Shown here piece by piece: positions 35,281 to 49,438 of a stretch of 64,000 nt of DNA. Below the pieces are notes generated by a model that searched no databases, was not told the origin of the DNA, and saw only the letters and a list, made by a program, of their open reading frames with translations. Location: the IMG/VR virus record IMGVR_UViG_3300040801_002079, positions 186,001-250,000 of that record. One strand, written 5' to 3'. Numbering within the stretch: position 1 is the stretch's first letter; each line of letters starts with the position of its first letter. Made by a program: the position numbers and the translations under genes.

Positions 35281-35543
35281 AACACACGCTTTAAGTCATA
35301 CACCCATTTAATTTCATCGCCAGATAAACTTCGATCCCATATAGCAACCTCATCGATATGAAGGTTGTATTTCTTAGCAATATATTTTGCATCTTCATAA
35401 TTGTCAACGGGGCACATAGGAGTTCCATGAGGATACTCCAATTCTTTAACAGTATTACGAGCTAAAAGACTTGGCGCTGCTGCAACACCAACTGCACCCA
35501 CTACTGCACCCGGAACTAATTTCAAAAAGTTTCTACGTTTCAT
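35277..35543 (-). CDS. Tat-signal protein with LamG-like C-terminal fragment
   Basis: MKRRNFLK; HIDEVAIWDRSLSGDEI. Confidence 0.6.
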   Translation of the reverse strand: MKRRNFLKLVPGAVVGAVGVAAAPSLLARNTVKELEYPHGTPMCPVDNYEDAKYIAKKYNLHIDEVAIWDRSLSGDEIKWVYDLKRVL

Positions 35544-35923
35544 AACTTAAATTCCTGAATAAAATCCATTTCACCAACAAAATCGCCTATCGTGGTAAAC
35601 GTCTGCCATGTCTCCTTTCTACCATGTATATCGTTTTGTACGATAGCCCCGTCCTTTAATTTCTCAGCCGCATCACCAGTAATTCTCCAGCCATGCCCGA
35701 ACTCAATCAATTCATCGGAATGTGCTGATACTTCGGCTTCATTCTTCATAAAGTCATAAAGTTCTTTAACCGTATAATGTTCACCTTCACCAATATAATG
35801 AATGTTACCGTTACTATCTACCCAGAACGGGTTGTTCTGTGTAGCCATAGCTACTAGTGGTGACGCACCAATTGCTCCTGCCGTTAGTGTTATTACAAAT
35901 TCTCTGCGTTTCATACGGAACAT
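35540..35923 (-). CDS. Tat-signal protein
   Basis: MKRREFV + hydrophobic stretch. Confidence 0.6.
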   Translation of the reverse strand: MFRMKRREFVITLTAGAIGASPLVAMATQNNPFWVDSNGNIHYIGEGEHYTVKELYDFMKNEAEVSAHSDELIEFGHGWRITGDAAEKLKDGAIVQNDIHGRKETWQTFTTIGDFVGEMDFIQEFKL

Positions 35924-35947
35924 TATACCACGCTATAACGTGTAAGT

Positions 35948-36631
35948 CTAGCCAGTTTCATAAATGGGTGCGTAGAATACGCCGGGAGAATGGACATTCA
36001 TATGATATCTTTGCTCAACCCATACGTTACGTTTAGGATTCAAATCATCCGGATCAACATATAAACTTCTGTAACCATAATATTTTAAAGTTAAATCATA
36101 CACCCCAGTGCGATTTACCACATTAATCACGCCCTTATATTCATAAAATTTATCACCGACATCATTTACTACATGTAGTTTATGCACCAATTTGGGGTCC
36201 ATAGCCCCCAATAATTGAACGGATGATAGGTAGATATCATCTTCGTCCACAATCAACCCACCGTATAAATGCTCCATGGTGGATGATGTTACCGTCCATC
36301 CATTTCTTAGTGATATAATTGTATCCGTGTGTCGATCTGAGGGGTTATCAAAAAACTCCCCAGTATAGATTGCGTCATCAGCCCAGTCTTGAAGATAGCG
36401 GTGTAACGCCACAACAGCCAAATAAGGTTTATCAGAATTAAGCGGGTATAAATCAATCACCCTGTTGGTCACATTCATTCCAAACTCTGAAATATCTGAA
36501 GAAACTGGGTCATATGTTCCCAATACATCCTGTCCAATTATAAGTTCATCATCTTGTGAGAATACTTCCCCAACCTTAATAGTTAAGGGTGATGAATATA
36601 GTAAACCCTTTAATAGCGTTCTGCGTTTCAC
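35948..36631 (-). CDS. Tat-signal-like protein
   Basis: MKRRTLLKG. Confidence 0.6.
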   Translation of the reverse strand: MKRRTLLKGLLYSSPLTIKVGEVFSQDDELIIGQDVLGTYDPVSSDISEFGMNVTNRVIDLYPLNSDKPYLAVVALHRYLQDWADDAIYTGEFFDNPSDRHTDTIISLRNGWTVTSSTMEHLYGGLIVDEDDIYLSSVQLLGAMDPKLVHKLHVVNDVGDKFYEYKGVINVVNRTGVYDLTLKYYGYRSLYVDPDDLNPKRNVWVEQRYHMNVHSPGVFYAPIYETG

Positions 36632-37134
36632 TTCTTCTTACTAACCTTCTTCTTAGTGGTTTTCTTCTTGGCTTTCTTTTTAGTGGCCTTCTTTTTTGCG
36701 ACTTTCTTTTTAGATGTCTCAGTGGTCGGTTCTTCATCTACTAACTCACCTTCTGATAACACCTCAGCGGTTTTCTCCAGAGCCGACTCCATTGCTCGTT
36801 TGACTTCTTCAGGCAACTCGGCCTGTTCCGTCTCTGTGTTCTCAGGCTTAACTGGGGGGCGAATACGGCAAGGGTTCTGCTGAGTATGAATGTTAACGGC
36901 TGCAACAATATTAAGATCATCCATTGTTGCATCACGCTGTGCCATTCTGCACAAATCAATATAATACATAATATGATCAATTGTCACTTCGTCAGTCCAT
37001 GCCTCAAAATCTTCGGGATATCCCCTGCGGGCACGTTTGGTATATTCGACTGCGTGGACTAACCACTTATAGTCGCGGCGAGGCACTAAGTCATAAATTC
37101 GTTTCTGTAATTCATCTGAAAAGTATAGTTCCAT
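36628..37134 (-). CDS. hypothetical with Lys-rich histone-H1-like tail
   Basis: KKKVAKKKATKKKAKKKTTKKKVSKKK. Confidence 0.7.
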   Translation of the reverse strand: MELYFSDELQKRIYDLVPRRDYKWLVHAVEYTKRARRGYPEDFEAWTDEVTIDHIMYYIDLCRMAQRDATMDDLNIVAAVNIHTQQNPCRIRPPVKPENTETEQAELPEEVKRAMESALEKTAEVLSEGELVDEEPTTETSKKKVAKKKATKKKAKKKTTKKKVSKKK

Positions 37135-37145
37135 AATTTTTCCTC

Positions 37146-37640
37146 TTATACGTATGGGCTTCTGTATGATGGTAAATGTCTTGATCTAGAGTCAAAATCC
37201 AATGTTACAACGGCGGGGGTTCGATATGCCGGAACCACCATATCTACGCCATGCATATGCAATGTATGTCTGCACCTAACTCTAAAATTAACATGACTTG
37301 GACATGAATGATAAAATTTAACATATCCATCAGTGTCTGTTACATCATTAACGAAAAGATCACGTTCTTCCACAGTTTTAATCCCCTCTTGAGACTTTGA
37401 ATTATCCCAAACCGCTACACGGGCATTGGGGACAGGCACTCCGTCTATATCCAGCACTAGAACCCGAAACCATTGTCCAATCTCACTATCGTGTGGTGGA
37501 GCAATATCCTCGTAGTTAATGGTTTTAACATTGGAGGTTGGCTCCATTGCTTGATCTTGATTTTGTTTAAGCGGAGCAATCCTCGTCTTTGACGGTTTTG
37601 CAACACGAGTTGAAGTTATTAATGATTTTCTATTATTCAT
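37146..37640 (-). CDS. hypothetical with prealbumin-like beta-sandwich
   Basis: VLD.DG.PVPNARV..TDTDGYV. Confidence 0.55.
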   Translation of the reverse strand: MNNRKSLITSTRVAKPSKTRIAPLKQNQDQAMEPTSNVKTINYEDIAPPHDSEIGQWFRVLVLDIDGVPVPNARVAVWDNSKSQEGIKTVEERDLFVNDVTDTDGYVKFYHSCPSHVNFRVRCRHTLHMHGVDMVVPAYRTPAVVTLDFDSRSRHLPSYRSPYV

Positions 37641-37706
37641 GACTTTACCATATTATTATAGTATGAAATCATAAAACTAAAGGCATGTCAACACCCTTTT
37701 AAAAAT

Positions 37707-37782
37707 TGGTGGGCCGTGCAGGACTCGAACCTGCAACCAATAGATTAAAAGTCTACTGCTCTACCAATTGAGCTAACGGCCC
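37707..37782 (-). tRNA. tRNA-Lys(TTT), canonical
   Basis: loop CTTTTAA, CCA. Confidence 0.95.
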
Positions 37783-38079
37783 AAATAAGTTGCAACATAT
37801 TACGAGTTGTCCCCTCGTAGGGGGTGTAATTCGCAACATATTACTACTTATGGTTTAGATTATACCTGCGATTGAGGTATAGTAGGCATAAGCAATCAGA
37901 CCTGTAACAATTGACGCTACGCCCTGCACAAACATTCTAGCTCTCATTTCATTTCTCCTTTAATCAAGTTAGGTTGGTGAGAAAGAACGGTCTAAATGTT
38001 CACTTCTATTTATCAAAGTTATCACTCTTTGAAAATATTATAACTCTTTGATATTACAGAATTATTACAGTTTTTAAAT

Positions 38080-38156
38080 TGGCCCCCACTGAGGGACTTG
38101 AACCCCCAACCCTCGGTTTCGAAGACCGATGCTCTATCCAATTGAGCTAAGTGGAG
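38080..38156 (-). tRNA. tRNA-Arg(TCG)
   Basis: loop CTTCGAA, CCA. Confidence 0.92.
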
Positions 38157-38163
38157 ATATGTT

Positions 38164-38251
38164 TGGTGGGACCGGCAGGATTCGAACCTGCAATGGGATT
38201 TCTCCGCCTGATTAAGAGTCAGGTACCTTCAGCCAATTCGGTCACGATCCC
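38164..38251 (-). tRNA. tRNA-Lys(CTT) with long variable arm
   Basis: loop CTCTTAA, 15-nt variable region, CCA. Confidence 0.85.
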
Positions 38252-38396
38252 CGTGCTTGGTAGGCTTCTAATCCAATTTTGCCCATCATAAACAACCCAA
38301 AAAACGGGAATGCTAAAACATACAATGGAGTAGTAATAAAAGCCAATAAAAATAATCCTATGCGTTTTAAAGTTTTCATAAACTCATTATAGCATA

Positions 38397-39869
38397 CTAT
38401 TTAAAATCATGAAAGAGCCACCAGTTAATCTTTTTGCCTGTTCTTATGGTGAACACCTTGGCAACATGTCTAGCCCCGAACGCCATAGCAAACAATAACG
38501 CCAATAGAATACCAAACCATGTATGTTGCACAAAGGCAAAATATAAAAAGTTTTCAAAAGTCGATGGGACGAGTGTCATAAACCCATTATATAAGCGAGA
38601 ATTAACACTTGGATCAAATTCAGAAGAACTGAAATACCAAACCAATATTGCAGTAAATAGAGTCAATTCCGTTATGACATGATATAGCACAGTTCGAATC
38701 ATATGCAACATGTTAATTCTGGATTTCAGTTTTTTAACATCATCAACGCCCACTTCGTACACGATAGGTGGTTGATCTTGTTTTGTTCCAACAATTTCAA
38801 ATTTATTGGGAAACACTGGTGCATATCTTCTTAATGAAATTCGTTCAAACACAGAGTCATGTATTTTTATATTACCCTCAACCATCGTCTCAGATATATC
38901 CCGTATATGACGAGGAGAATATCTATAATATCCCATTATCCCACGCCGTGAATCTGGTAGTGAGCCACCGGGGTTCATTCCATCTTTAACATCTGACCAT
39001 AAATTAGGGTTAAATATCACCCCATGAGATGCTGCCCTTTCCATCATCCAGTCTAGTGTAATCATTGATAAGCCTGTACGCTCTAATCCGCCTCCCACAT
39101 TACTGTGTCCTCCTGCAAACCAGACTTGTTCAATGTGTTGAGGACGTTCTGTATCATTTTCATTCCATAGGTTAGGATGAAAAGACTTTCTTTCATCATC
39201 TATAGCTAATGCATGATATGCGTGTTTTACATTTTTATCCAATTGAAATTCATAGTATCGATGAGGGAAAAATACATTTGTTATTTTATCTATGAGCATT
39301 GATAAGCCGATCACAAGCCAAGAAGAGTCTTTAGGGAATCCCAGTGCTTCAACTGTGTCCCATGCACCAATCATTTCAATGTCCACACTTCCGTGGGTTT
39401 TCCTAGCTTTAAAATCTTCTAGTTCGTCTTTGTACTTTTCAGAACGTTTATATAGACGCAAAGCTTTTAAACACTCAATTGTAAATTTAATTCTATCCAA
39501 TCTACCGCTCGTGGTTACAACTTTAGAATCTTTCTTTAAAAGACCAACCCTCTGTATCATACCGACTGCTGCCCTAACTGTAGCGGCTCCGCGACTGAAC
39601 CCGAAGAAAAATATTTTATCTCCCGGTTCATAATGCCTAGCTAGATATCCATAAAGATTTAATACATTTTTTTGAAAACCGAAGCCAAATGCTCCAGACA
39701 GTAAACGCATAAAACCTAAGCCCTTTGAGCCTATACCATCATCATAGTATGCAATCTGGGTTGTATTCTGTGTATCTACAGCCTTATAAAGCTGAAACAC
39801 ATTGGTGTTGAGTATTGCTCCGCCAGCCTTACCTGTACCATCTGAGCATAAAATAATATTCTTGGACAT
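38397..39869 (-). CDS. DUF2235/Tle1-like alpha/beta hydrolase with C-terminal TM helices
   Basis: LCSDGT, GFSRGAA, WDTV, HALAIDDER, QVWFAGGHSNVGGG. Confidence 0.9.
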   Translation of the reverse strand: MSKNIILCSDGTGKAGGAILNTNVFQLYKAVDTQNTTQIAYYDDGIGSKGLGFMRLLSGAFGFGFQKNVLNLYGYLARHYEPGDKIFFFGFSRGAATVRAAVGMIQRVGLLKKDSKVVTTSGRLDRIKFTIECLKALRLYKRSEKYKDELEDFKARKTHGSVDIEMIGAWDTVEALGFPKDSSWLVIGLSMLIDKITNVFFPHRYYEFQLDKNVKHAYHALAIDDERKSFHPNLWNENDTERPQHIEQVWFAGGHSNVGGGLERTGLSMITLDWMMERAASHGVIFNPNLWSDVKDGMNPGGSLPDSRRGIMGYYRYSPRHIRDISETMVEGNIKIHDSVFERISLRRYAPVFPNKFEIVGTKQDQPPIVYEVGVDDVKKLKSRINMLHMIRTVLYHVITELTLFTAILVWYFSSSEFDPSVNSRLYNGFMTLVPSTFENFLYFAFVQHTWFGILLALLFAMAFGARHVAKVFTIRTGKKINWWLFHDFK

Positions 39870-39887
39870 GAATATATTTATTTAAAT

Positions 39888-39975
39888 TGGTGGGACCGGC
39901 AGGATTCGAACCTGCAACGGGATTTCTCCTCCGGATTAAAAGTCCGGTACCTTCAGCCAATTCGGTCACGATCCC
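39888..39975 (-). tRNA. tRNA-Lys(TTT) with long variable arm
   Basis: near-identical to 38164-38251, loop CTTTTAA. Confidence 0.85.
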
Positions 39976-39981
39976 TTAATT

Positions 39982-40058
39982 TGGCACCCATGGTAGGAGT
40001 CGAACCTACACCTTCGGCCTTCGTAGGACCGCGCTCTATCCAGTTAAGCTACATGGGC
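39982..40058 (-). tRNA. tRNA-Arg(ACG)
   Basis: loop CTACGAA, CCA. Confidence 0.93.
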
Positions 40059-40229
40059 ATAGTTACATACTGACTTCCGATTTGAATCAATCTCCTGTTC
40101 CACACCATCCGATTTGCAACTCTTCCAGTGCTTCCACCTCAGATTCCAATTGCCATGTTCCATATCATATCATGTGCACATCAATGATATGGGGAAGTTT
40201 AACATTCGATAACTTTCAGTATGTAAAAA

Positions 40230-40307
40230 TGGTAGCGGGGGCAGGATTCGAACCTGCGTTCTCAGGGTTATGAACCCCGTATGTTGACCGGACTACACCA
40301 CCCCGCA
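40230..40307 (-). tRNA. initiator tRNA-fMet(CAT)
   Basis: GGG:CCC anticodon stem, 1:72 mismatch, CCA. Confidence 0.9.
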
Positions 40308-40308
40308 A

Positions 40309-40701
40309 TTATAACAATTCGAGATTACCTGTATACTTATCCAGTATCTCAGGGTCTGCTGGGCCAACCGCTAGACATGTATAGGTTGGCTCTTTGAATT
40401 CGGTTCTACCTTCGTCCTGAATTAAAGCGTGATGTTCAAGACCCCTGACATCCCTAATTTCTTCATAAAGATCAAGTAACTCTCTTTCAGAATCAACACT
40501 AACGCAAATCTTAGTGAACTTACCGTTTAACCATGCATTCATCTGAGGAGTTAAAGGAATAACCCTATGTCCTCTTTCACCATAATTGGAAAGGTTAATG
40601 GAGTCTTTTAAAATAGCACCCATTGATGCGTGTGCACCTTGCGCAACCATTTTACCCTTACGCATGTTTAAATCTTTGCGCATTACAATTACTTGTTTCA
40701 T
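40309..40701 (-). CDS. peptidyl-tRNA hydrolase, Pth2 family
   Basis: KQVIVMRKDLNMRKGKMVAQGAHA, IQDEGRTEF, TCLAVGP. Confidence 0.92.
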   Translation of the reverse strand: MKQVIVMRKDLNMRKGKMVAQGAHASMGAILKDSINLSNYGERGHRVIPLTPQMNAWLNGKFTKICVSVDSERELLDLYEEIRDVRGLEHHALIQDEGRTEFKEPTYTCLAVGPADPEILDKYTGNLELL

Positions 40702-40910
40702 TACCTCATTCCCCAGCTACCATGTTGTGTTATAAAAATAGTAGTTCTATCAGCCGAGACATAAAACATTCCATCATAGAACTCTGCGAAATCATCTAGT
40801 GAACCTGAAAATTCCCAATCCCCCGTATCCAAATTTACATCGCAAATTCTCTTCAACTGTTCATGAGTTGATTTGCTACTACCATGATATTCATAAACTC
40901 TATATTTCAT
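40701..40910 (-). CDS. hypothetical protein
   Basis: coupled small ORF. Confidence 0.55.
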   Translation of the reverse strand: MKYRVYEYHGSSKSTHEQLKRICDVNLDTGDWEFSGSLDDFAEFYDGMFYVSADRTTIFITQHGSWGMR

Positions 40911-40919
40911 ATCTCTTTC

Positions 40920-41174
40920 CTATATTGAGAATATATGATAACCCTTCTTTTCCATAGAATCAAGAAAGTCCTCGGCTGATACTATGCCCAAATATTGCGA
41001 ATCGGGCGATACGTCAACGTCCTTCTTTAATAGATAAAGCTCTTTAAGATGTTTAAAGTCTTGAGATACATCACTTTCTACTGGAAAGGCGGCATACCAT
41101 TTCCTATCCAAGAGCTTACAAACCTTTGATTTATATATGTTTACTCTCATATTTTCTCTCATTTGATCTGACAC
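40920..41174 (-). CDS. hypothetical protein
   Basis: small ORF in operon. Confidence 0.5.
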   Translation of the reverse strand: MSDQMRENMRVNIYKSKVCKLLDRKWYAAFPVESDVSQDFKHLKELYLLKKDVDVSPDSQYLGIVSAEDFLDSMEKKGYHIFSI

Positions 41175-41184
41175 TCTCTCATAA

Positions 41185-41502
41185 TTAATATTGACAACAC
41201 GTTAATTCGCCAGATGGGTATACACACAAAGCAACGGTGTAATCATGATCATCTTCTCTCCATGTGTATTTGGTTGAGAGCCTAACCCCTCCATCACTTT
41301 CAGTGCATAATATATTAAACGAATGTATTAAATCATTCCACTCTAATTTTTCCATCAAATTCCATGCATCATCTTCAATTTTTTCAAAGGTAGAAGACGT
41401 TGCCGGTTCAAAAAAATATTTTTCCAAAATGTCGCTCATTCTAATTTTTATAACATCATTTAATTCAGTTGGGGTCATTATTTTATCTCCATTTTCTCTC
41501 AT
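41185..41502 (-). CDS. hypothetical protein
   Basis: small ORF in operon. Confidence 0.5.
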   Translation of the reverse strand: MRENGDKIMTPTELNDVIKIRMSDILEKYFFEPATSSTFEKIEDDAWNLMEKLEWNDLIHSFNILCTESDGGVRLSTKYTWREDDHDYTVALCVYPSGELTCCQY

Positions 41503-41508
41503 TTAATC

Positions 41509-41585
41509 TGGCACCCTCGGCAGGACTCGAACCTGCAACCTTCTGGTTAGAAGCCAGATGCTCTATCCAATTGAGCTACAAGGGC
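41509..41585 (-). tRNA. tRNA-Arg(TCT)
   Basis: loop CTTCTAA, CCA. Confidence 0.95.
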
Positions 41586-41586
41586 T

Positions 41587-41913
41587 TTAATACTTTCTAA
41601 GTAACGGCTGTATACTACCATCAGTTTTAAATCTAATAATAAGGGATGATCCTTCAAAGTGCCACTGTGCACTGAACTCTCCTGACGGATTTACTGTCAA
41701 TGACGGGCGATATTCGAAAAACTTTAATAATGCAAACAATGAAACATCATTGACCGGCTCTCCCTCATCTTCAGCTTCATCTATTAACCAACGAATCCTT
41801 TCAGCAATAGCATGGTTAGCATTTGCCTGATTTGGCAACCATTGACATAACATTTCGTCAGTTTTATCCATCATCTTCACTCGTCGGTGCCGGAAATAAA
41901 GTTCCAAACTCAA
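41587..41913 (-). CDS. hypothetical protein
   Basis: ORF; start probably internal Met. Confidence 0.5.
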   Translation of the reverse strand: MSLELYFRHRRVKMMDKTDEMLCQWLPNQANANHAIAERIRWLIDEAEDEGEPVNDVSLFALLKFFEYRPSLTVNPSGEFSAQWHFEGSSLIIRFKTDGSIQPLLRKY

Positions 41914-42229
41914 AGTGGGTTACTTCATTCCCATCAAGACTACCAACTCCAGCGATAGTAAGAGTTTCGGATACAAGTTCAAAATCTTTCACTATCTTAC
42001 CATTGAATGTAACTTTATTATCCTTGATATCATATGATGTTATAAACCCTATAATATCGGAAGGTTCCTGTACAATTCCTTTCTTTGTTACTGGCAACCC
42101 TCTATCGGAATCAAGTGCCTTAATGATTGCCTTCTCAAACATATCAGGATCATACACATGACCACCGGAATTTTCTTCGCCTAACATGAAGTTTAGTTCC
42201 CCTGAGAATTCTGTAGTTTGTTCACCCAT
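41864..42229 (-). CDS. hypothetical, weak prohead-protease-like fold
   Basis: NSGGHVY..F.KAI resembles gp21 N-terminus. Confidence 0.45.
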   Translation of the reverse strand: MGEQTTEFSGELNFMLGEENSGGHVYDPDMFEKAIIKALDSDRGLPVTKKGIVQEPSDIIGFITSYDIKDNKVTFNGKIVKDFELVSETLTIAGVGSLDGNEVTHFEFGTLFPAPTSEDDG

Positions 42230-42697
42230 TTAATACTCCAATATATCTGTATTCTTCAATTTAAAACGTATATCCATAAGTCTACTACAAAACTCTTGCT
42301 TTGTCAAAACAGTCTCGCTTTTCTTATTTCTTCCGATACTGTGAGTTAGGTTTGCATCGCCTGTAGCTAAGAGAGCTTTGCGGGCCTTTTCGTTCTGAGA
42401 AAATAATGCCCAGTATGCACCATCAAGCAATTCCTGATACTCTGCTGAATCTCGTTTAATAGCTTTATCTTTCCAGTACAATGTTTGATCACGTTGCCAA
42501 TTCTTGCCAGAACCTGCTTTCTTGGCTGCAAACCCAACCAATGTGCAGATATGTTTCTGCATGTCTGGATTTTTAAATTTAAGTGCCTGTAAAAACCCTT
42601 CCATGGAATTACATTCAACCCCATCAAACACAAAGGGATGTGGGGCAAAGTTTGACAATGCATTTGATGGGTATGTTTTTCCCGATCTAATGTCCAC
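42230..42697 (-). CDS. NADAR-like protein (T4 gp30.3 family)
   Basis: ALSNFAPHPFVFDG, SMEGFLQ, LLATG..LTHSIG. Confidence 0.8.
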   Translation of the reverse strand: MDIRSGKTYPSNALSNFAPHPFVFDGVECNSMEGFLQALKFKNPDMQKHICTLVGFAAKKAGSGKNWQRDQTLYWKDKAIKRDSAEYQELLDGAYWALFSQNEKARKALLATGDANLTHSIGRNKKSETVLTKQEFCSRLMDIRFKLKNTDILEY

Positions 42698-42817
42698 TTC
42701 ACTCTCCTATTCTTGACTACCCTAACAGTTAGCATCTACTCAACCTTCCGGCGTGACCTGTGGCTCTAAAGGATTCTGGTCTGGTAGTCGGTACTACAAT
42801 CCTTTTTTCCCATAATC

Positions 42818-42903
42818 TGGAGCGGGTACGCGGAATCGAACCGCAAGTCCTAACGGAATCGGGGTGGAAGCCCGACAGCGACACCAGATAGCTCAGTACC
42901 CGC
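42818..42903 (-). tRNA. tRNA-Gly(TCC) with long variable arm
   Basis: GCGGGTA acceptor, U73, loop CTTCCAC, V-arm TTCCGTTAGGACT. Confidence 0.8.
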
Positions 42904-42909
42904 ATTGTT

Positions 42910-42987
42910 TGGGGTGGCTGGAGGGACTCGAACCCTCGACCTCTGGAATCACAATCCAGCGCTCTAACCAACTGAGCTACAGTCACC
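42910..42987 (-). tRNA. tRNA-His(GTG)
   Basis: G-1:C73, loop TTGTGAT. Confidence 0.95.
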
Positions 42988-42994
42988 ATTGTTA

Positions 42995-43489
42995 TCATTT
43001 AATTTCACGAAACATTACATAATCTAAATGGCAAAAATAAAAGTCTCCATATCGTCTTGATTTTCTATCATATATGTTTCGAACCTTCCATTGTTTTCTT
43101 GTATTTTCAGGAATAATCATACAGTGTGTCAATGTTTTATTCGCTATAACATAAGAATATAATGGCAATTCATGATCGCCATCGGCCTTATATTTTTCAT
43201 CAACGATAATATCAGGGTAAGCAAATTCTTCCTTTGATTTAAAGTTCATATCGGGGCGATGCTTTACCTCAATTCGTCCTTCATTTCCTTCATGTATAAT
43301 CTTTAAATCACCTTCGTCCGTATGACTCCATCGACTTCGGTAATCCGGAGTTAAAGATTGATCCAATTTTACAACATTTAACCCCATACTCACTAACCAT
43401 TGACATACAACATCTGCTGCTACCATGCCTTTACAGTAATCTACTCTAAAATCGTCATCTGGTTTCATATAACTTGCCTTTCCAACCAC
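42995..43489 (-). CDS. hypothetical PD-(D/E)xK-like protein
   Basis: DEGDL...IEVKHR. Confidence 0.55.
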   Translation of the reverse strand: MVGKASYMKPDDDFRVDYCKGMVAADVVCQWLVSMGLNVVKLDQSLTPDYRSRWSHTDEGDLKIIHEGNEGRIEVKHRPDMNFKSKEEFAYPDIIVDEKYKADGDHELPLYSYVIANKTLTHCMIIPENTRKQWKVRNIYDRKSRRYGDFYFCHLDYVMFREIK

Positions 43490-43493
43490 TGTT

Positions 43494-43742
43494 CTATATT
43501 ATATAACTTCCCCAGTTATCTAATTCTCCATTCCATTCATACCGAAGTGTGAATATTTCACCAACGGGGCCAGTCATTGGCTGAACACCTACCAACTGTT
43601 CAACAATCATCATAGGATAAAAATTACGCACATATGAAACCATCCATGATGATTCATCAATTATTCCAACCCTCTCTAAAAAACTTATGCTTGGAGTAAG
43701 GGCTGCAATAACAAAGCCTTTTAATAATGATCGTCTTTTCAT
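43494..43742 (-). CDS. Tat-signal protein carrying a gp23 (Gol-region) fragment
   Basis: MKRRSLLKG; VRNFYPMMIVEQLVGVQPMTGPVGEIFTLRY. Confidence 0.75.
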   Translation of the reverse strand: MKRRSLLKGFVIAALTPSISFLERVGIIDESSWMVSYVRNFYPMMIVEQLVGVQPMTGPVGEIFTLRYEWNGELDNWGSYII

Positions 43743-43759
43743 AATTTTATCCTTTAATT

Positions 43760-43836
43760 TGGCGGGGAAGGAGGGACTCGAACCCCCGACCCGCAGATTA
43801 ACAATCTGCCGCTCTGACCAACTGAGCTACTTCCCC
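43760..43836 (-). tRNA. tRNA-Asn(GTT)
   Basis: loop TTGTTAA, CCA. Confidence 0.95.
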
Positions 43837-44040
43837 TTTACTTTTCTAACAATCCAGTCAATACTTTCCGATCCGGCTAACATCAGGGCTACCCATAAAA
43901 TCAAATAAAGCATGGAATATGCCCCGAATGTATCACCATACGTATCGGCTAAATATTTAAATAATTCATAGCCACCCCATAGATTAAGAATGACCCATAT
44001 TAATTTGAGTATTGATATTCTCATAGCAATAAATAATAAC

Positions 44041-44751
44041 ATGAAACTTAAAGACTTACAAGAAGCCTTCGATACTCAAATTTCTAACATCGATTATGAT
44101 GGACACTTTCCATTTGGTTATATCCAAACCAAAGATGACGATGCTCTTGGTCATGGGGAATTCTCCAGAGTGACGCAAGATAAAGATGATCCCCATATGG
44201 TTGATAAGCAACAGCTTAACAGGACCGACAGGTCTGGAAGCATCTTTGTTGATATGTTTGACCAGTATGCTGAAATCATTGCCGAAGAACGTCTATGGGA
44301 AATGATTCACTTTCCACGAGTTTATGCTATTAAAAAATATACAGACGAAGCTGGTGAGGTTCGCAATAAATGGAAAATGGAAAAACTCATAGAACTGGAT
44401 TCTCTTGACCAAGAAGAAATCAAACGTATGACTCATCGTTATTTTATCCCCGAAGTTGCCGAAGAAGTTGCGGAACTAGATGCGGAAAAAGAAGATCAAT
44501 ATCATTATTCAAACTTTGCTGATGCAATCTCAGTCGCAATACATGAAGGTGAGTGGGATCACTTCAGAGATAAGACCCTAGAGAAAGCCGCTGAAAAATT
44601 AGAAGACATCTATACCGATCTTCGGCAAAATTATGGGTATGATGCAGTTGCTTTGGATTTACATTCTGGGAACATAATGGTTAGAAGAACCCAGAATGGC
44701 CTTCAAGTTGTTTTCTCTGACCCGTTCGCGGGAAGAAAACAATATATGTAA
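44041..44751 (+). CDS. protein-kinase-like protein with head-targeting leader
   Basis: LGHGEFSRV, MEKL, DLHSGNIM, FSDP; starts MKLKDLQE after AATAAATA. Confidence 0.75.
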   Translation: MKLKDLQEAFDTQISNIDYDGHFPFGYIQTKDDDALGHGEFSRVTQDKDDPHMVDKQQLNRTDRSGSIFVDMFDQYAEIIAEERLWEMIHFPRVYAIKKYTDEAGEVRNKWKMEKLIELDSLDQEEIKRMTHRYFIPEVAEEVAELDAEKEDQYHYSNFADAISVAIHEGEWDHFRDKTLEKAAEKLEDIYTDLRQNYGYDAVALDLHSGNIMVRRTQNGLQVVFSDPFAGRKQYM

Positions 44752-44752
44752 T

Positions 44753-44841
44753 TGGTACCGTAGGCGGGATTCGAACCCGCAGCCCGAAAAGACGGGCACA
44801 GGCTCTCAACCTGCTGTGTATACCGATTCCACCACTACGGC
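44753..44841 (-). tRNA. tRNA-Leu(GAG)
   Basis: loop TTGAGAG, long V-arm, CCA. Confidence 0.93.
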
Positions 44842-44849
44842 AAAGAATC

Positions 44850-45006
44850 ATACAATGTGATCACGGGCGTGTTATTTAACCGCTAACGGACCCACTCAAC
44901 CTATTCCATTGTATACGTGCCACCATTGAGCTTGTGGCGTTAAAGTTCTTCCGCATTCTGACCATCCCGGAATCGCGTGATACTTCATTGTCAGCATCCG
45001 TATCAC
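44850..45006 (-). ncRNA. structured ncRNA candidate with two loop-loop pseudoknots
   Basis: four stems, complementary loops CTGAC/GTCAG and CTCAA/TTGAG. Confidence 0.5.
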
Positions 45007-45176
45007 TCTGATAACGACTTTCCCTTTAACAACTTAGATAACAATCTGCGCAAAAGAGTTTGTTTCTCAACTTCACGCTTTCTTAGTGCATAATAGTGTA
45101 ACATAGCTTTCTTGCCTTGTCTACTACGTAATATCATGTCTAACTGCTTCTTGTTCATGCCTGTGTCTCCCGTGTT

Positions 45177-45238
45177 TGGTGGAACTGACCGGACTCGAAC
45201 CGGCAACTTCGCGCACTCTACCGTTGAGCTACAGTCCC
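45177..45238 (-). ncRNA. anticodon-arm-less tRNA-Ala-like RNA
   Basis: acceptor with G3:U70 and A73-CCA, D arm, T arm; only 10 nt between D and T arms. Confidence 0.8.
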
Positions 45239-45540
45239 TATCGTGGTGGTCGTGTTTTTACCACTTCCGAAAATTCATCTTTGTCCAAGTACCAAAATGG
45301 ACTAGATGGTTTAAATCCATGCTGTTCCAATATTGCAAGATCAGCTTTAGTTAAGTAATACATCTTTAGATAATCTTCGGGATGTAAGACTGTATGTGAT
45401 ATCAGCCTGAGTGCGTTGGTCATATTACTATCATCCCATCCACTAGACCCCAACATTCTCACAACCATGTAGATTATCAGGCTGATGCTGCCTGCTAAAA
45501 AAAGTATAACACCTAAACATATCAACATTGCAATTGTCAT
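45238..45540 (-). CDS. membrane protein
   Basis: N-terminal TM, GGAG RBS. Confidence 0.6.
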   Translation of the reverse strand: MTIAMLICLGVILFLAGSISLIIYMVVRMLGSSGWDDSNMTNALRLISHTVLHPEDYLKMYYLTKADLAILEQHGFKPSSPFWYLDKDEFSEVVKTRPPR

Positions 45541-45570
45541 AATTATTCTCCCTTGTTATACTTATTTATT

Positions 45571-45663
45571 TGGTAGTAGGGGAGGGATTCGAACCCATCA
45601 CCAACCTCTAATCTGGAGTTCGAGATTATAAATCTCGTCGTGCTACCGTTACACCACCCTACC
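45571..45663 (-). tRNA. tRNA-Ile(TAT) with long variable arm
   Basis: loop TTTATAA, V-arm AACTCCAGATTAGAGGTT, CCA. Confidence 0.8.
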
Positions 45664-45763
45664 ATTAATACTTCAGGGGAACTCGCTCTCTCCAAGCACC
45701 TTACGGTGGCGAGTCTCATCTGCGGCCTATCCCGTCCATTTTTTACACTGAAGCGATTTTTTT

Positions 45764-45840
45764 TGGTGGACCTAGACGGACTCGAACCGACATCAGCTAC
45801 ATTGCAAATGTAGAGCTTTCCCAAATTAAGCTACAGGCCC
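45764..45840 (-). tRNA. tRNA-Ala(TGC) second copy
   Basis: G3:U70, loop TTTGCAA. Confidence 0.92.
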
Positions 45841-46100
45841 TTTAATACTTTATCTAACCACCAATGCGGATACTTTTCATCTTCATACAATTCATACTTA
45901 AAAAGTAATCCTTGTTCAATGTCTTCGCGCCACATCTTAACGGTGACATCCATATACTTCTTACCAATGTAAAAACCGTTATTATCTTTACATCTTCCCA
46001 GCCCATGTGATTCCTGTAAGTTTAACTCTCTCATGGAATCATCACTGTAATCACAAATGTGTTCCCAGTCTTTAGAAAAAAGTCTGTAGACCTCGCACAT
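45831..46100 (-). CDS. hypothetical protein
   Basis: 89-aa ORF, stop inside tRNA-Ala. Confidence 0.6.
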   Translation of the reverse strand: MCEVYRLFSKDWEHICDYSDDSMRELNLQESHGLGRCKDNNGFYIGKKYMDVTVKMWREDIEQGLLFKYELYEDEKYPHWWLDKVLKGL

Positions 46101-46188
46101 TCTTATAAATTTACCGGTTAATTTCGGTCCTCTGCGTTTAGCTGTGTCATGGCATCCTCCTATGCATTGGTGACATATATTGATAATT

Positions 46189-46266
46189 TGGAGCCGTCAC
46201 TGTGGAATCAAACCCAGTTGGTCGGACTTACGAGGCCCGTGCATCAATCGGCAATGCTTTGACGGC
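46189..46266 (-). tRNA. tRNA-Thr(CGT), divergent
   Basis: loop CTCGTAA; T loop TTTGATT with bulged T stem. Confidence 0.7.
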
Positions 46267-46268
46267 AT

Positions 46269-46513
46269 AAAAAAATGGCTGCTCCCGTAAGAACAGCCAT
46301 TCGATAATAAAGAAAGGTAAACCTCCCACCACAACATAGGGAGCCTTTTGTGGAAATTCTCAGCGCCTCCACCTGTGAGCAAAGCTCTTAGGGTTCGTCC
46401 TTGAGACTCAGGCCGTTCGCTAAAACGTTTTAACCTATGTGCCCATAGGTTCCATCATCTTGCGACATTTACCTTTCAAACACAATACTACACTACATAG
46501 TATTGAATGTCAA
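46269..46513 (-). ncRNA. promoter + structured RNA + terminator unit
   Basis: TTGACA-N17-TAGTAT; closing stem AAAGGTAAA/TTTACCTTT; terminator GGCTGTTC..GAGCAGCC-A-T7. Confidence 0.6.
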
Positions 46514-46514
46514 G

Positions 46515-46591
46515 TGGTACCCACGGTAGGATTCGAACCTACAACATCTGCCTTTTGAAGGCAGCGCCTCTGCCAATTGCGCTACGTGGGC
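46515..46591 (-). tRNA. tRNA-Leu(CAA) with short variable loop
   Basis: loop TTCAAAA, 5-nt variable loop, A73-CCA. Confidence 0.85.
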
Positions 46592-46599
46592 ATAATGAT

Positions 46600-46675
46600 T
46601 GGCAGGCGAGGAGGGCCTCGAACCCCCAACCTGCGGTTTTGGAGACCGCTGCTCTTCCAATTAAGCTACTCGCCT
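46600..46675 (-). tRNA. tRNA-Trp(CCA)
   Basis: loop CTCCAAA, CCA. Confidence 0.95.
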
Positions 46676-47283
46676 ATTTTCTTACAATTCTCAAAATGCC
46701 ACCTAGTCATTCCATTTTGTACACCACGCAATCCACAATGGGGGCAAGTTACATATATCTTTTCTTTCAACTTTAATGATTCGCTAATTTTATTTATATG
46801 TTCTAGTGTTTTTGGTTTCGAAGCAGCTTTTGATGCATGGGACTTTTGTGCTAAAGGGTCGCGCCTAGACCAGTGATTCTTCGACATTAGGTGGCGAGTT
46901 TTATCTGATACTGGTGGTCGCTTTAACGCTGCTTGCCGAATCTTATTCTTTGTTTCAAAATTATGGGATTTACCACTAAATGCACCAATAATTCCGGGAT
47001 TACCTCCACTTCCGCCAACTTTTAAATTATAACATAACGGGCTATTAACTACCGATTCATTAACCAAGCTTCGCTCAATATAAAACATCTCTTCCTTAGT
47101 ATCAACCACGGCTAAAATTTCTTTCTCAAAATTCTCAATTCCATATTTTTTAATGGCTCGTTTCAAAACCTTGCCCGAACCCATATACCCATCATTTAAA
47201 TCAACGGTCTTATGGCAACCTATATAAAACCTACCGTTGATTTTATTTGTTATCTTATAAACAATGTATTTAATGTCTATCAT
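46666..47283 (-). mobile_element. GIY-YIG (Seg-like) homing endonuclease with NUMOD3-like repeats
   Basis: [17 protein letters not shown]; N-terminus near-identical to 33906-34685; TATAAATA upstream. Confidence 0.85.
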
Positions 47284-47304
47284 GTATGTATTTATACTAA
47301 TATT

Positions 47305-47356
47305 TGGTGGGGAAGCCAGAACGAGCCGTTGGCCCGCGTGTGTACACACCCTCCCC
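47305..47356 (-). ncRNA. 52-nt mini RNA with acceptor-like stem and ACCA
   Basis: GGGGAGG...CTTCCCC-ACCA. Confidence 0.6.
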
Positions 47357-47362
47357 ATTGTT

Positions 47363-47452
47363 TGGTACTCTGGGTCGGACTCGAACCGACACGGGCACAC
47401 ACGGCCCACTGGATTTTAAATCCAGCGCGACTACCAATTTCGCCACCAGAGC
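47363..47452 (-). tRNA. tRNA-Leu(TAA)
   Basis: loop TTTAAAA, long V-arm. Confidence 0.93.
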
Positions 47453-47461
47453 ATTCTTGTT

Positions 47462-47515
47462 TGGTGGAGAGTGAGTTGAGTCCATGAAACCCAACGCTGA
47501 TCAGACTTCCTCTCC
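47462..47515 (-). ncRNA. 54-nt mini RNA with acceptor-like stem and ACCA
   Basis: GGAGAG...CTCTCC-ACCA. Confidence 0.6.
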
Positions 47516-47521
47516 ATTGTT

Positions 47522-47596
47522 TGGTGTTACCGACGAGATTCGAACTCGCACCGTCCAGAGTGAAAGTCTGGTGACCTACCATTAGTCTACGGTAAC
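47522..47596 (-). tRNA. tRNA-Glu(TTC)
   Basis: loop CTTTCAC, CCA. Confidence 0.92.
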
Positions 47597-47774
47597 ATGT
47601 TAATTTTAGGGTTAACCGGCATTCAGTGCAGTCTTAGACAAACCACCTGAGGTCGGGATGGTAAAAACCCTCTCAAAAATTTAACCCATCTTTATTACGT
47701 TTCACCCCTCGCGCACACAATAGAAGCTACCTATTGCGGTCTACTGCGCTACTCGGTCAGTCGTAATTCTAATT

Positions 47775-47864
47775 TGGTACGATGGGTCGGACTCGAACCG
47801 ACACGGGCACACACGGCCCACTGGCTTCTAAAGCCAGCGCGACTACCAATTTCGCCACCATCGC
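47775..47864 (-). tRNA. tRNA-Leu(TAG)
   Basis: loop TTTAGAA; paralog of Leu(TAA). Confidence 0.93.
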
Positions 47865-47870
47865 ATAATT

Positions 47871-47946
47871 ATCAAAGCGTTTTTGCCACTTAAACTACTG
47901 TCCCGGTGCCGGGATCAGGTGGGTTTCGAACCCACATCTCCTTGAT
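47871..47946 (-). ncRNA. circularly permuted tRNA-like RNA
   Basis: order T arm, loop-closed acceptor stem, D arm; ends pair. Confidence 0.7.
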
Positions 47947-47957
47947 CATATATTGTT

Positions 47958-48033
47958 TGGAAACCCCGGTGAGATTCGAACTCACACAAACCAGAATCAA
48001 AATCTGGTGCTCTACCAGTTAAGCTACGAGGCT
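47958..48033 (-). tRNA. tRNA-Gln(TTG)
   Basis: loop TTTTGAT, CCA. Confidence 0.9.
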
Positions 48034-48149
48034 ATAAATTTGGTGTGGGATACTTAACGCCCAGCATCGCTCCCACGACAACCCCTGCAATAGAATATCT
48101 CCGCTTGCGGCACCATCTATTACATCTAAGGCGGGTTACTTAAGTAAGG

Positions 48150-48389
48150 TTATCTACATTGCCACTGGTACTGTCCATAGATCATAAACCACATACTTGA
48201 TGTCCATGGTGCCAGTGTAAACGTATAATAATTATATTGATCCCTATAATAGCAATTCATATAATAGGGTGTTTGATTTAGAATCCTAATCACAGGCTGT
48301 CCTGAGTTATTTCGGGTAACCTGCTCAACAACTGCTGCGGATGCTGTTGAAGAAAATAATAGCAGTAATGTTAAAAGTATAGCTCTCAT
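48150..48389 (-). CDS. small secreted protein
   Basis: Sec signal MRAILLTLLLLFSSTASA. Confidence 0.65.
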   Translation of the reverse strand: MRAILLTLLLLFSSTASAAVVEQVTRNNSGQPVIRILNQTPYYMNCYYRDQYNYYTFTLAPWTSSMWFMIYGQYQWQCR

Positions 48390-48727
48390 GGCATATCTCC
48401 TACATCCATTATTTCCTGACGAACTTTCATTATCTCTTTAAGCTGTTCCTTGTACATATCATACTTAATCTGCTCATTAACCGATAATGTTCCACCCGCT
48501 TCTTCAATCTTTCCATACATTTCGATTCTCATTTCAAGTAATAGCATCTGAGTATCTATATGGCGAAGATCGGATATTTCTTTGTGCATGTAACGAGTGT
48601 CGAGCCATAGTGCACCCGTAATCATCATACCAAGTAAGGTTCCCAGAACGGGTCCAAAAAGAATTAATCTTTTATACCATTTCTTAATGGCTCTAGCGGT
48701 TTGATCAGTTTTAACTTCGTCATTCAT
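48386..48727 (-). CDS. membrane-anchored coiled-coil protein
   Basis: single TM; late promoter. Confidence 0.6.
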   Translation of the reverse strand: MNDEVKTDQTARAIKKWYKRLILFGPVLGTLLGMMITGALWLDTRYMHKEISDLRHIDTQMLLLEMRIEMYGKIEEAGGTLSVNEQIKYDMYKEQLKEIMKVRQEIMDVGDMP

Positions 48728-48786
48728 ATACCTATTTATGCTCAGAGCTTAGACATTTTTCATGTCTAAGTGTCTAAGTACAGGAA

Positions 48787-48862
48787 TGGCGGTCCCGGTA
48801 AGAGTCGAACTTACACCATCCAGAATCAGAATCTGGCGCTCTACCAGTTAAGCTACGGGACT
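48787..48862 (-). tRNA. tRNA-Gln(CTG)
   Basis: loop TTCTGAT, CCA. Confidence 0.92.
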
Positions 48863-48867
48863 ATATG

Positions 48868-49167
48868 TTACTGTAGAACATCTTGAATAAGTGATATGTA
48901 GTCACGGTCTCCACGGGTTGTAATTTCATTACCATCCGCTTGGTCCTGTGTTACTATCCATGTTTCCTCATGTACCATTTCACCACTTGAAACACAAACA
49001 AAGTCAGCGACCATTTCAGGGCTATACTCATTGATTTCTTCTAGATATTCCGCGACATACTTATCACGGGCTGCTCTAGCCCTATCAATATCTCCAAATA
49101 TGCCCAAGGATTCTACATTAAATCCACCCGAACATTCAGCATGTTCTAAACGATAAATTTTTTGCAT
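48868..49167 (-). CDS. hypothetical protein
   Basis: ORF in operon. Confidence 0.55.
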   Translation of the reverse strand: MQKIYRLEHAECSGGFNVESLGIFGDIDRARAARDKYVAEYLEEINEYSPEMVADFVCVSSGEMVHEETWIVTQDQADGNEITTRGDRDYISLIQDVLQ

Positions 49168-49171
49168 TTAC

Positions 49172-49438
49172 TTAAGCCTCAAAAAACTCAGGAAGTGCTT
49201 CTTTCAATTCCTTTGTAGTTAAGACGGTATGAGTTAATTCCTCAACAACATCACCAACCTCTTCTCTCAGGTCTTCTATGTTGGAATTAACGTCTTCAAC
49301 CGTTGGCAATTCTTCATAACCGATAAGGTGATTTATGTGTAACTCGCCCTCTTCCTTATCCATTTGAAAAAATACAACCCAGTGCGAACATTCATTAACA
49401 TTAAATTCTTCCATAACTTTTCCTCTTAGTTCCACCAA
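49172..49438 (-). CDS. hypothetical acidic protein
   Basis: ORF in operon. Confidence 0.55.
   Translation of the reverse strand: MVELRGKVMEEFNVNECSHWVVFFQMDKEEGELHINHLIGYEELPTVEDVNSNIEDLREEVGDVVEELTHTVLTTKELKEALPEFFEA

What the first reader, a model, noticed from the sequence alone, without database searches (positions are those of the whole stretch)
38164..46591. tRNAs with swapped variable-arm class: long-arm Lys, Gly, Ile and short-arm Leu
Seen: Lys(CTT) 38164, Lys(TTT) 39888, Gly(TCC) 42818 and Ile(TAT) 45571 have long variable arms, while Leu(CAA) 46515 has a 5-nt loop. Established: in bacteria long arms are confined to Leu/Ser/Tyr/Sec, UAU anticodons are rare, and tRNA-Lys is a frequent anticodon-nuclease target. 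A canonical Lys(TTT) is kept as well. Inference: altered bodies evade tRNA-targeting defences, or are charged with an amino acid other than the anticodon implies.
Basis: partly seen in the sequence, partly recalled or inferred. Interest (0 to 1): 0.62.

Follow-up and report, generated by a model that had tools for sequence, protein, structure and literature searches.

The report
Phage tRNAs with swapped arm class
A huge phage carries intact lysine, glycine and isoleucine tRNAs with an extra arm and a leucine tRNA without one; such swaps are common in tRNA-rich phages, and the isoleucine tRNA's extra arm looks like a copy of the anticodon arm that the charging enzyme normally reads.

Summary
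Observation confirmed. The window is the 37-gene tRNA array of a complete 317-kb T4-like phage from a microbial mat. ARAGORN, Rfam and free folding agree that Lys(CUU), Lys(UUU), Gly(UCC) and Ile(UAU) carry a variable-arm hairpin and that Leu(CAA) has a 5-nt variable loop.

This is not a local oddity. 26 of 28 tRNA-rich relatives have at least one swapped tRNA. About 40% of their Leu tRNAs are short-armed. Long arms concentrate in tRNAs for ANN codons (Lys, Asn, Thr, Ile, Met).

Charging with the wrong amino acid is disfavoured:
- Short Leu keeps the full E. coli LeuRS identity set.
- Gly keeps G1-C72, C2-G71, G3-C70 and U73.
- No long-armed Lys has the full Leu set, and there is no phage synthetase for these four amino acids.

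Main new result: long-armed tRNA-Ile(UAU) is a large phage family, also present in cultured Lactobacillus phages. Its extra arm is a covarying 4-bp helix with a 7-nt loop centred on GAU and a conserved C-G third pair. These are the IleRS recognition nucleotides of tRNA-Ile(GAU). A surrogate anticodon arm that rescues charging of UAU is plausible but untested.

Nuclease evasion for Lys, Gly and Leu rests on circumstantial evidence only.

The parts
21176..54266 (-). Array of 37 tRNA genes, all on the minus strand, interspersed with small ORFs
   Evidence: ARAGORN; Rfam. The genome holds 43 tRNAs plus a tmRNA.
38164..38251 (-). tRNA-Lys(CUU), 88 nt, class-II shape. It has a 3-bp D stem and an extra hairpin GGA/GAAA/UCC at 38196-38205. 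A73. Arg(UCG) follows after 7 nt.
39888..39975 (-). tRNA-Lys(UUU), 88 nt, 94% identical to the CUU copy. Extra hairpin at 39920-39929. Arg(ACG) precedes it by 6 nt.
42818..42903 (-). tRNA-Gly(UCC), 86 nt. Extra hairpin UCC/GUUA/GGA at 42848-42857. G1-C72, C2-G71, G3-C70, U73. His(GUG) precedes it by 6 nt.
45571..45663 (-). tRNA-Ile(UAU), 93 nt. It has a normal anticodon arm, then a second hairpin at 45606-45618 (CUC / loop CAGAUUA / GAG), then a linker and the T arm. A73.
46515..46591 (-). tRNA-Leu(CAA), 77 nt, 5-nt variable loop at 46543-46547. Leu-type D loop. A73, A15, U48, G18G19, A20a. Trp(CCA) precedes it by 8 nt.
37707..37782 (-). Canonical class-I tRNA-Lys(UUU). Its acceptor stem (79%) and T arm (94%) resemble those of the long-armed copies.
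38397..39869 (-). 490-aa DUF2235 / Tle1-like hydrolase gene, lying exactly between the two long-armed Lys genes.
   Evidence: Pfam PF09994, E 3.6e-72.
40309..40701 (-). Peptidyl-tRNA hydrolase PTH2. Used as the anchor to find related phage tRNA arrays.
   Evidence: Pfam PF01981, E 5e-30.
25087..26274 (-). CCA-adding enzyme (PolyA_pol family).
46666..47409 (-). SegE-like GIY-YIG homing endonuclease inside the array. It is a possible driver of recombination between tRNA genes.
   Evidence: Pfam PF19835, PF01541.

Best explanation
The five genes are functional, re-bodied isoacceptors of a huge phage's own tRNA set. Host synthetases most likely charge them with the amino acid that the anticodon implies.

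(1) Leu(CAA) belongs to a widespread phage lineage of class-I-shaped tRNA-Leu. It has dropped the long arm, which E. coli-type LeuRS does not need, but keeps every LeuRS determinant.

(2) Ile(UAU) belongs to a large phage family with two tandem anticodon-arm-like hairpins. The first carries UAU with U33 and A37, and decodes AUA, which makes up 35% of this phage's Ile codons. The second keeps C29-G41, G34, A35 and U36 of tRNA-Ile(GAU) but usually has A at position 33. I infer that it offers IleRS the anticodon arm it recognises. This would compensate for the roughly 100-fold poorer charging of UAU by ordinary IleRS.

(3) The Lys and Gly tRNAs are mosaics. They combine a cognate acceptor stem, T arm and anticodon with a class-II D arm and a minimal stable hairpin. 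The Lys hairpin is nearly identical to the variable arm of a tRNA-Leu in the same genome. The changed shape most likely makes them poorer substrates for host enzymes that attack tRNA. This last step is inference only.

My estimates: cognate charging about 0.75; Ile mimic about 0.35-0.4; evasion for Lys, Gly and Leu about 0.3.
For: Structure.

Generality:
- In 926 unique tRNAs from related huge phages, 37 of 81 Leu are short. Long arms occur in Lys 10/50, Asn 9/39 and Ile(UAU) 9/14, but in 0 of 211 Ala, Asp, Cys, His, Phe, Trp and Val tRNAs.
- 26 of 28 tRNA-rich records have at least one swap.

Leu identity (determinants from PMC9976931):
- All five E. coli determinants are present in 60/77 short Leu, including the window copy.
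- The figure is 105/117 for long Leu and 88/1326 for other class-I tRNAs.
- A 3-bp D stem occurs in 71% of short Leu against 14% of class I.

Ile family:
- 88 of the first 120 pattern hits in viral contigs are this tRNA, against 7 of 120 in bacterial genomes.
- The extra helix covaries like the T stem; its second pair shows GC 47, UA 18, AU 10, CG 10.
- In a search that did not specify the loop, 39 of 41 new members have GAU at the loop centre, and 33 of 36 have C-G as the third pair.
- C29-G41 occurs in only 20% of their real anticodon stems, against 56% in phage Ile(GAU) and 10% in other tRNAs.
- E. coli IleRS charges UAU at 1.1% efficiency (PMC3575796).

Other points:
- No phage synthetase cores for Ile/Leu, Lys or Gly.
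- ATA usage.
- Mosaic origin.
- 38 of 47 other extra arms fold into hairpins of 3 bp or more, and 23 have GNRA loops.
Against: - There is no expression, charging or cleavage data, and no RNA runs. The host is unknown.
- A variable arm normally points away from where IleRS binds the anticodon. The mimic idea therefore needs a flexible arm or an alternative fold, and neither has been shown.
- Loop positions 37 and 38 of the mimic are not conserved.
- 5 of 15 Ile(UAU) in the unbiased sample are short-armed and 2 of the long ones lack the motif, so the arm is not obligatory.
- Long Lys(CUU) keeps the AriB site and U16U17, so it is not altered at known determinants.
- It also has four of the five LeuRS determinants and a Leu-type arm, so some leucylation cannot be excluded.
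- The enrichment statistics ignore the relatedness of the phages, and the groups were chosen after seeing the data.
Confidence: 0.5

Rival explanations
1. Neutral mosaicism. Dense arrays of 30-60 tRNA genes, with homing endonucleases among them, recombine and shuffle arms. Any chimera that still carries the identity elements survives. On this view the arm class has no function of its own.
For: - The long Lys has a Lys-like acceptor stem (79%) and T arm (94%) with a variable arm 93% identical to that of Leu(UAA) in the same genome.
- Short Leu(CAA) has an acceptor stem (86%) and T arm (94%) like Arg(ACG) in the same genome.
- A GIY-YIG endonuclease lies inside the array.
- The same hairpin type occurs in Leu, Tyr, Lys and Thr tRNAs of different phages.
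Against: - The distribution across amino acids is strongly non-random: tRNAs with U36 are long in 44/294 cases against 13/465 for the rest.
- The extra arms are compact, stable hairpins rich in GNRA loops, not random inserts.
- The Ile arm has a conserved loop and a covarying stem across many lineages.
- Short Leu is a coherent lineage that uses all six Leu anticodon types.
Confidence: 0.3
2. Mischarging of the nev-tRNA type. The class-II bodies are charged by LeuRS, TyrRS or SerRS, so Lys, Gly or Ile codons are partly read as another amino acid.
For: [quoted passage not shown]
- The window's long Lys has A73, A15, U48, G18G19 and a Leu-type variable arm.
- Its acceptor stem scores best as Tyr in a weak classifier.
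Against: - Long Lys lacks A20a, and 0 of 15 long Lys have the full Leu set.
- Long Gly has U73. Long Asn and Gln in relatives have G73 with cognate first base pairs. Both are incompatible with LeuRS.
- The D arms of the Ile family are heterogeneous.
- The extra arms (3-4 bp) are shorter than the phage's own Ser arms.
- AUA is 2.3% of all codons in this phage, so misreading it would damage the phage's own proteins.
Confidence: 0.1
3. The extra arms are handles for a phage-encoded factor, such as a modification enzyme, a processing factor or a protective protein. That factor would distinguish phage tRNAs from host tRNAs while the phage depletes the host's.
For: - Some relatives give many species a long arm at once; G009 has eight.
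- GAAA tetraloops recur, in 17 of 47 arms.
- The Ile loop sequence is conserved.
- The phage encodes its own CCA-adding enzyme, PTH2 and an RNA ligase.
Against: - No candidate partner gene was identified.
- The Ile family occurs in very different phages, from 4-kb fragments to 480-kb genomes and Lactobacillus Herelleviridae. A shared phage partner is therefore less likely than a universal host partner such as IleRS.
Confidence: 0.1

Closest known systems
Nematode nev-tRNAs (PMC3333845)
   Same: They are class-II-shaped tRNAs with class-I anticodons. Strikingly, they involve the same kinds: Ile(UAU), Gly and Lys(CUU). The variable arm is a hairpin of about 15 nt.
   Different: nev-tRNAs derive wholly from tRNA-Leu, are charged with Leu and are weakly expressed. 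The phage tRNAs keep cognate acceptor and discriminator elements, and as a family they lack the full Leu set. The Ile arm also carries a conserved GAU loop, which nev-tRNAs are not reported to have.
Phage T5 tRNA-Lys, Thr and Asn variants that resist PARIS AriB (PMC12409363, PMC11464382)
   Same: They are phage-encoded copies of the tRNAs that defences attack. The amino-acid set Lys, Asn and Thr matches the set most enriched for long arms.
   Different: The T5 tRNAs escape through point substitutions (U39A, A41C, U16C) in a normal class-I body. Here those positions are unchanged and the architecture differs instead.
Mycoplasma mobile tRNA-Ile(UAU) (PMC3575796)
   Same: It decodes AUA with an unmodified-type UAU anticodon, without lysidine.
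   Different: In M. mobile the synthetase adapted (Arg865), and the tRNA has a normal class-I body. In the phage family the tRNA itself carries an extra GAU-bearing arm.
Class-I-shaped tRNA-Leu of animal mitochondria and minimal E. coli tRNA-Leu constructs (reviewed in PMC9976931)
   Same: They are leucylated without a long variable arm. Identity rests on A73 and D/T-loop tertiary elements.
   Different: Those are organellar or engineered molecules. Here it is a natural, widespread lineage in phages of bacteria, used alongside long-armed Leu tRNAs.
allo-tRNAs and selC-like tRNA-Cys (PMC5389517, PMC7609411)
   Same: They are non-canonical, long-armed bacterial or phage tRNAs with unexpected anticodons.
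   Different: Those have 8/4 or 9/3 acceptor/T branches and serine identity. The window tRNAs have the standard 7/5 branch.

Membership tests
Bacterial class-II tRNA (Leu/Ser/Tyr/Sec) | Variable region of 10 nt or more that forms a stem-loop | tested here: met
   Lys 15 nt, Gly 13 nt and Ile 22 nt, each with a hairpin. Leu(CAA) has 5 nt, so it does not meet this feature.
Bacterial class-II tRNA (Leu/Ser/Tyr/Sec) | Anticodon for Leu, Ser, Tyr or Sec | tested here: not met
   The anticodons are CUU, UUU, UCC and UAU, in canonical 7-nt loops with U33.
nev-tRNA-like (Leu-charged class-II body) | Carries the LeuRS identity set (A73, A15:U48, G18G19, A20a) | tested here: not met
   Window long Lys has 4 of 5 (U at 20a). 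0 of 15 long Lys have all five. Long Gly has U73.
nev-tRNA-like (Leu-charged class-II body) | The whole body is closer to tRNA-Leu than to the synonymous class-I tRNA | tested here: inconclusive
   The long Lys variable arm is 93% like that of Leu(UAA), but its acceptor stem and T arm are closer to canonical Lys. Long Gly is closest to the Gly tRNAs.
nev-tRNA-like (Leu-charged class-II body) | Aminoacylated with Leu | not testable with these tools
   This needs charging assays.
allo-tRNA | 8/4 or 9/3 acceptor/T-stem branch | tested here: not met
   All five have 7-bp acceptor and 5-bp T stems. The Ile T stem has one bulged U.
E. coli-type tRNA-Leu (LeuRS substrate) | A73, A15:U48, G18G19, A20a and a 3-bp D stem | tested here: met
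   Leu(CAA) has all five determinants, as do 60 of 77 short Leu in phages. A 3-bp D stem occurs in 71% of them. In the window copy the third D-stem pair is a G-G mismatch under one pairing register.
T5-type nuclease-resistant phage tRNA | Substitutions at the nuclease's determinants (AriB: U39, A41, U16) | tested here: not met
   Long Lys(CUU) reads U36AAUCA41 and keeps U16U17. Long Lys(UUU) has C41 only (determinants from PMC12409363).
T5-type nuclease-resistant phage tRNA | Resists cleavage and rescues infection | not testable with these tools
   This needs cleavage and plaque assays.
IleRS substrate (bacterial Ile identity set) | A73, plus C29-G41, G34 (or lysidine), A35 and U36 in an anticodon-arm-like hairpin | tested here: met
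   These are met by the extra arm, not by the real anticodon arm. In the window the extra arm has loop CAGAUUA and a C-G third pair. In the family, GAU is present in 39 of 41 and the C-G pair in 33 of 36. The real stems have C29-G41 in only 20%. Whether IleRS can reach the extra arm was not tested.

The most novel reading that the evidence does not exclude
Phage tRNA-Ile(UAU) splits the two jobs of an anticodon arm between two hairpins. One decodes AUA on the ribosome. The other is a non-decoding copy of the tRNA-Ile(GAU) arm (C29-G41, G34, A35, U36, no U33) and is read by host IleRS. This lets a phage bring an AUA decoder into any host without lysidine synthesis or an adapted synthetase. It would be the first natural tRNA in which identity and decoding sit on separate arms.
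Probability: 0.35. Interest if true: 0.9.

Novelty: new variant of a known kind. Interest (0 to 1): 0.74.

Why it matters
The rule that long variable arms belong only to Leu, Ser, Tyr and Sec in bacteria-type systems is broken routinely in tRNA-rich phages. I found no paper that says so.

Three consequences follow:
- Annotation pipelines may miss or mislabel these genes. The LpeD copy, for example, is unannotated.
- The family offers natural tests of which tRNA features synthetases, the ribosome and anti-phage tRNA-cleaving enzymes actually need.
- If the Ile arm is a surrogate anticodon arm, it is a new principle of tRNA identity and a ready-made design for engineering tRNAs with new anticodons.

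Cultured Lactobacillus phages carry the Ile tRNA, so the idea can be tested directly.

Tried and rejected
- Close relatives of the window in the named-phage collection: none found, only short tRNA matches.
- Exact search for the D arm of the long Lys: one other viral contig. A first degenerate pattern with two gaps gave no answer.
- Classifying amino-acid identity from the acceptor stem alone: only 55% accurate on canonical tRNAs, so it is weak for Lys and Ile.
- Phage-encoded synthetases as orthogonal partners: none found for PF00133, PF00152, PF00587, PF01921 or PF02091. Other synthetase families were not searched.
- Expression: no RNA run holds the region. The laid contigs only confirm the DNA.
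- Anticodon mimicry in the extra arms of long Asn, Lys and the other species: not seen. They are generic GNRA hairpins.
- Base pairing of the Ile extra loop with the anticodon loop or T loop: by eye there is no complementarity consistent across the loop variants.
- Reading the GAU hairpin as the true anticodon arm: rejected, because it usually has A33 and a 4-bp stem, while the UAU hairpin has U33, A37 and 5-6 bp.
- Literature: six full-text searches found no description of class-swapped phage tRNAs.

Full report
**Context.** The window is bases 186001-250000 of a complete 316,801-bp virus record with direct terminal repeats. It comes from a microbial-mat metagenome. The phage is T4-like: it has a gp30.3 homologue, and it also encodes PTH2. 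The window holds 37 tRNA genes, all on the minus strand. The genome holds 43 tRNAs, an amber-suppressor tRNA and a tmRNA.

**Observation.** All five flagged genes are called by both ARAGORN and Rfam, and all encode CCA.
- Free-energy folding of both long Lys genes and the long Gly gene gives five-arm cloverleaves with a 3-bp plus tetraloop hairpin in the variable position.
- Leu(CAA) has a 5-nt variable loop.
- Each odd tRNA lies 6-8 nt from a normal partner (Arg, Arg, His, Trp), like the dimeric precursors of T4 (the T4 comparison is from my own knowledge).
- Independent contigs from the source sample match the Ile and Leu genes exactly.

**It is general.** I used PTH2 as an anchor and fetched tRNA arrays from about 68 huge-phage records. 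That gave 926 unique tRNAs.
- 37 of 81 Leu are short-armed. All 26 Tyr and 62 of 64 Ser are long.
- Long arms occur in Lys 10/50, Asn 9/39, Ile(UAU) 9/14, Ile(GAU) 4/32, Thr 4/56, Met 3/55, Gln 4/50 and Glu 3/45, with a few in Arg, Gly and Pro.
- There are none among 211 Ala, Asp, Cys, His, Phe, Trp and Val tRNAs.
- 26 of 28 records with 10 or more tRNAs have at least one swap.
- tRNAs with U36 are long in 44/294 cases against 13/465 for the rest. Lys, Asn and Thr together are long in 25/152 against 22/592. These tests are uncorrected for relatedness and the groups were chosen after seeing the data.
- Of 47 extra arms outside the Ile(UAU) family, 38 fold into hairpins of 3 bp or more and 23 have GNRA loops.

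- All five elements occur in 60/77 short Leu, including the window copy. The figures are 105/117 for long Leu and 88/1326 for other class-I tRNAs.
- Their D stems are the 3-bp Leu type in 71%, against 14% for class I.
- The same body type carries CAA, UAA, UAG, GAG, CAG and AAG anticodons. That fits a synthetase that ignores the anticodon.
- I conclude it is a leucine tRNA without the arm.

**Long Lys and Gly.**
- Gly keeps G1-C72, C2-G71, G3-C70, U73, C35 and C36, and is closest to the phage's own Gly tRNAs.
- Lys is a mosaic. Its acceptor stem (79%) and T arm (94%) resemble the canonical Lys. Its variable arm is 93% identical to that of the Leu(UAA) at genome position 65932. That hairpin type recurs in Leu, Tyr, Lys and Thr tRNAs of other phages.
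- LysRS identity is the anticodon plus A73 (PMC9976931), and both are present.
- The window's long Lys has four of the five Leu determinants (U at 20a), and 0 of 15 long Lys have all five.
- In relatives, long Asn keeps U1-A72 and G73, long Gln keeps U1-A72, G2-C71, G3-C70 and G73, and long Thr keeps G1-C72 and C2-G71.
- No synthetase core for Ile/Leu, Lys or Gly is encoded by the phage.
- Cognate charging by host enzymes is therefore the economical reading. A nev-tRNA-like outcome (PMC3333845) is not excluded for Lys.

**Long Ile(UAU).** This is the strongest result.
- A pattern built from the anticodon loop and the extra loop hit 120 or more viral stretches, and 88 of the first 120 are this tRNA. 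In 185,579 prokaryotic genomes only 7 of the first 120 hits are, and most of those lie inside tRNA arrays.
- Cultured Lactobacillus phages LpeD (unannotated there) and ENFP1 carry it.
- In 87 aligned members the extra helix covaries as well as the T stem. Its second pair shows GC 47, UA 18, AU 10 and CG 10.
- In a second search that did not specify the loop, 36 of 41 new members have the loop Y-A-G-A-U-N-N, and three more have CCGAUUA or CUGAUUA. So 39 of 41 have GAU at the centre. The third pair from the loop is C-G in 33 of 36.
- The bacterial Ile identity set is A73, C29-G41, G34, A35, U36, A37 and A38 (PMC9976931). The extra arm therefore copies the anticodon arm of tRNA-Ile(GAU).
- C29-G41 is present in only 20% of the real anticodon stems of this family. 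It is present in 56% of phage Ile(GAU) and 10% of other tRNAs.
- The hairpin is followed by about 5 nt before the T stem, like an anticodon arm followed by a normal variable loop.
- E. coli IleRS charges UAU at 1.1% efficiency (PMC3575796).
- This phage uses ATA for 35% of its Ile codons.
- I infer a surrogate anticodon arm for IleRS. How the enzyme would reach it is unknown.

**Defence evasion.** The evidence is circumstantial.
- For: AriB cleaves Lys(UUU), Thr(UGU) and Asn(GUU) (PMC12409363). A bacterial Schlafen cleaves Lys and Met (PMC13056530). MenT3 uses the variable arm as an anchor (PMC11541572). The phage has an Rnl1-type ligase and an AAA_33 kinase.
- Against: long Lys(CUU) keeps the AriB cleavage site and U16U17.

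**Verdict.** It is part of a widespread and apparently undescribed phage phenomenon. Mischarging is unlikely. The Ile arm deserves an experiment.

Noticed in passing
window 45177-45238 (-): A 62-nt tRNA-like gene found by Rfam (47.6 bits) but not by ARAGORN. It has an acceptor stem, D arm, T arm and encoded CCA, but only about 10 nt where the anticodon arm and variable loop should be. It has G3:U70 and A73, the alanine identity elements. It could be an AlaRS-chargeable, non-decoding RNA, or a decayed tRNA-Ala. A crude scan of the other loci found no clear homologue.
   Followed up: partly
genome 83385-83476 (+), outside the window: A 92-nt tRNA-Cys(GCA) with a long variable arm. Its D arm (86-91%) and T arm (88%) match the phage's own tRNA-Ser, but it has U73. 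This is another class swap, resembling the selC-like tRNA-Cys.
   Followed up: partly
window 38164-39975: The two 94%-identical long Lys genes form direct repeats that flank a 490-aa DUF2235 / Tle1-like hydrolase gene. This looks like a duplication tied to insertion of a gene cassette.
   Followed up: no
window 52972-53047 (-): The canonical tRNA-Ile(GAU) has the anticodon loop CCGAUAA, with C33 in place of the near-universal U33. 7 of 70 phage Ile(GAU) in the sample share this.
   Followed up: partly
window 51219-51293 (-): ARAGORN reports a tRNA of undetermined identity with an irregular anticodon loop (two-base 'anticodon' AG) and no CCA. Rfam does not report it.
   Followed up: no
window 40230-40307 (-): A tRNA-Met(CAU) with initiator hallmarks: three G-C pairs next to the anticodon loop and an unpaired U1/U72. 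It also has an unusual D arm.
   Followed up: no
genome 140922-140999 and 164015-164365, outside the window: An amber-suppressor tRNA(CUA) and a tmRNA (tag ANDSIYDQALAA) are encoded by the phage. I did not test whether TAG is recoded.
   Followed up: no
L119-L121 (IMGVR_UViG_3300032254_000001, 344 kb): One relative gives a long arm to eight normally short-armed species at once: Asn, Gln, Glu, Ile(GAU), Ile(UAU), Lys, Met and Thr. Most of these arms have GAAA loops.
   Followed up: partly
window 46666-47409 (-): A SegE-like GIY-YIG homing endonuclease ORF sits inside the array. As drawn from its GTG start it overlaps tRNA-Leu(UAA) at 47363-47452, so the true start is probably further downstream.
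   Followed up: no
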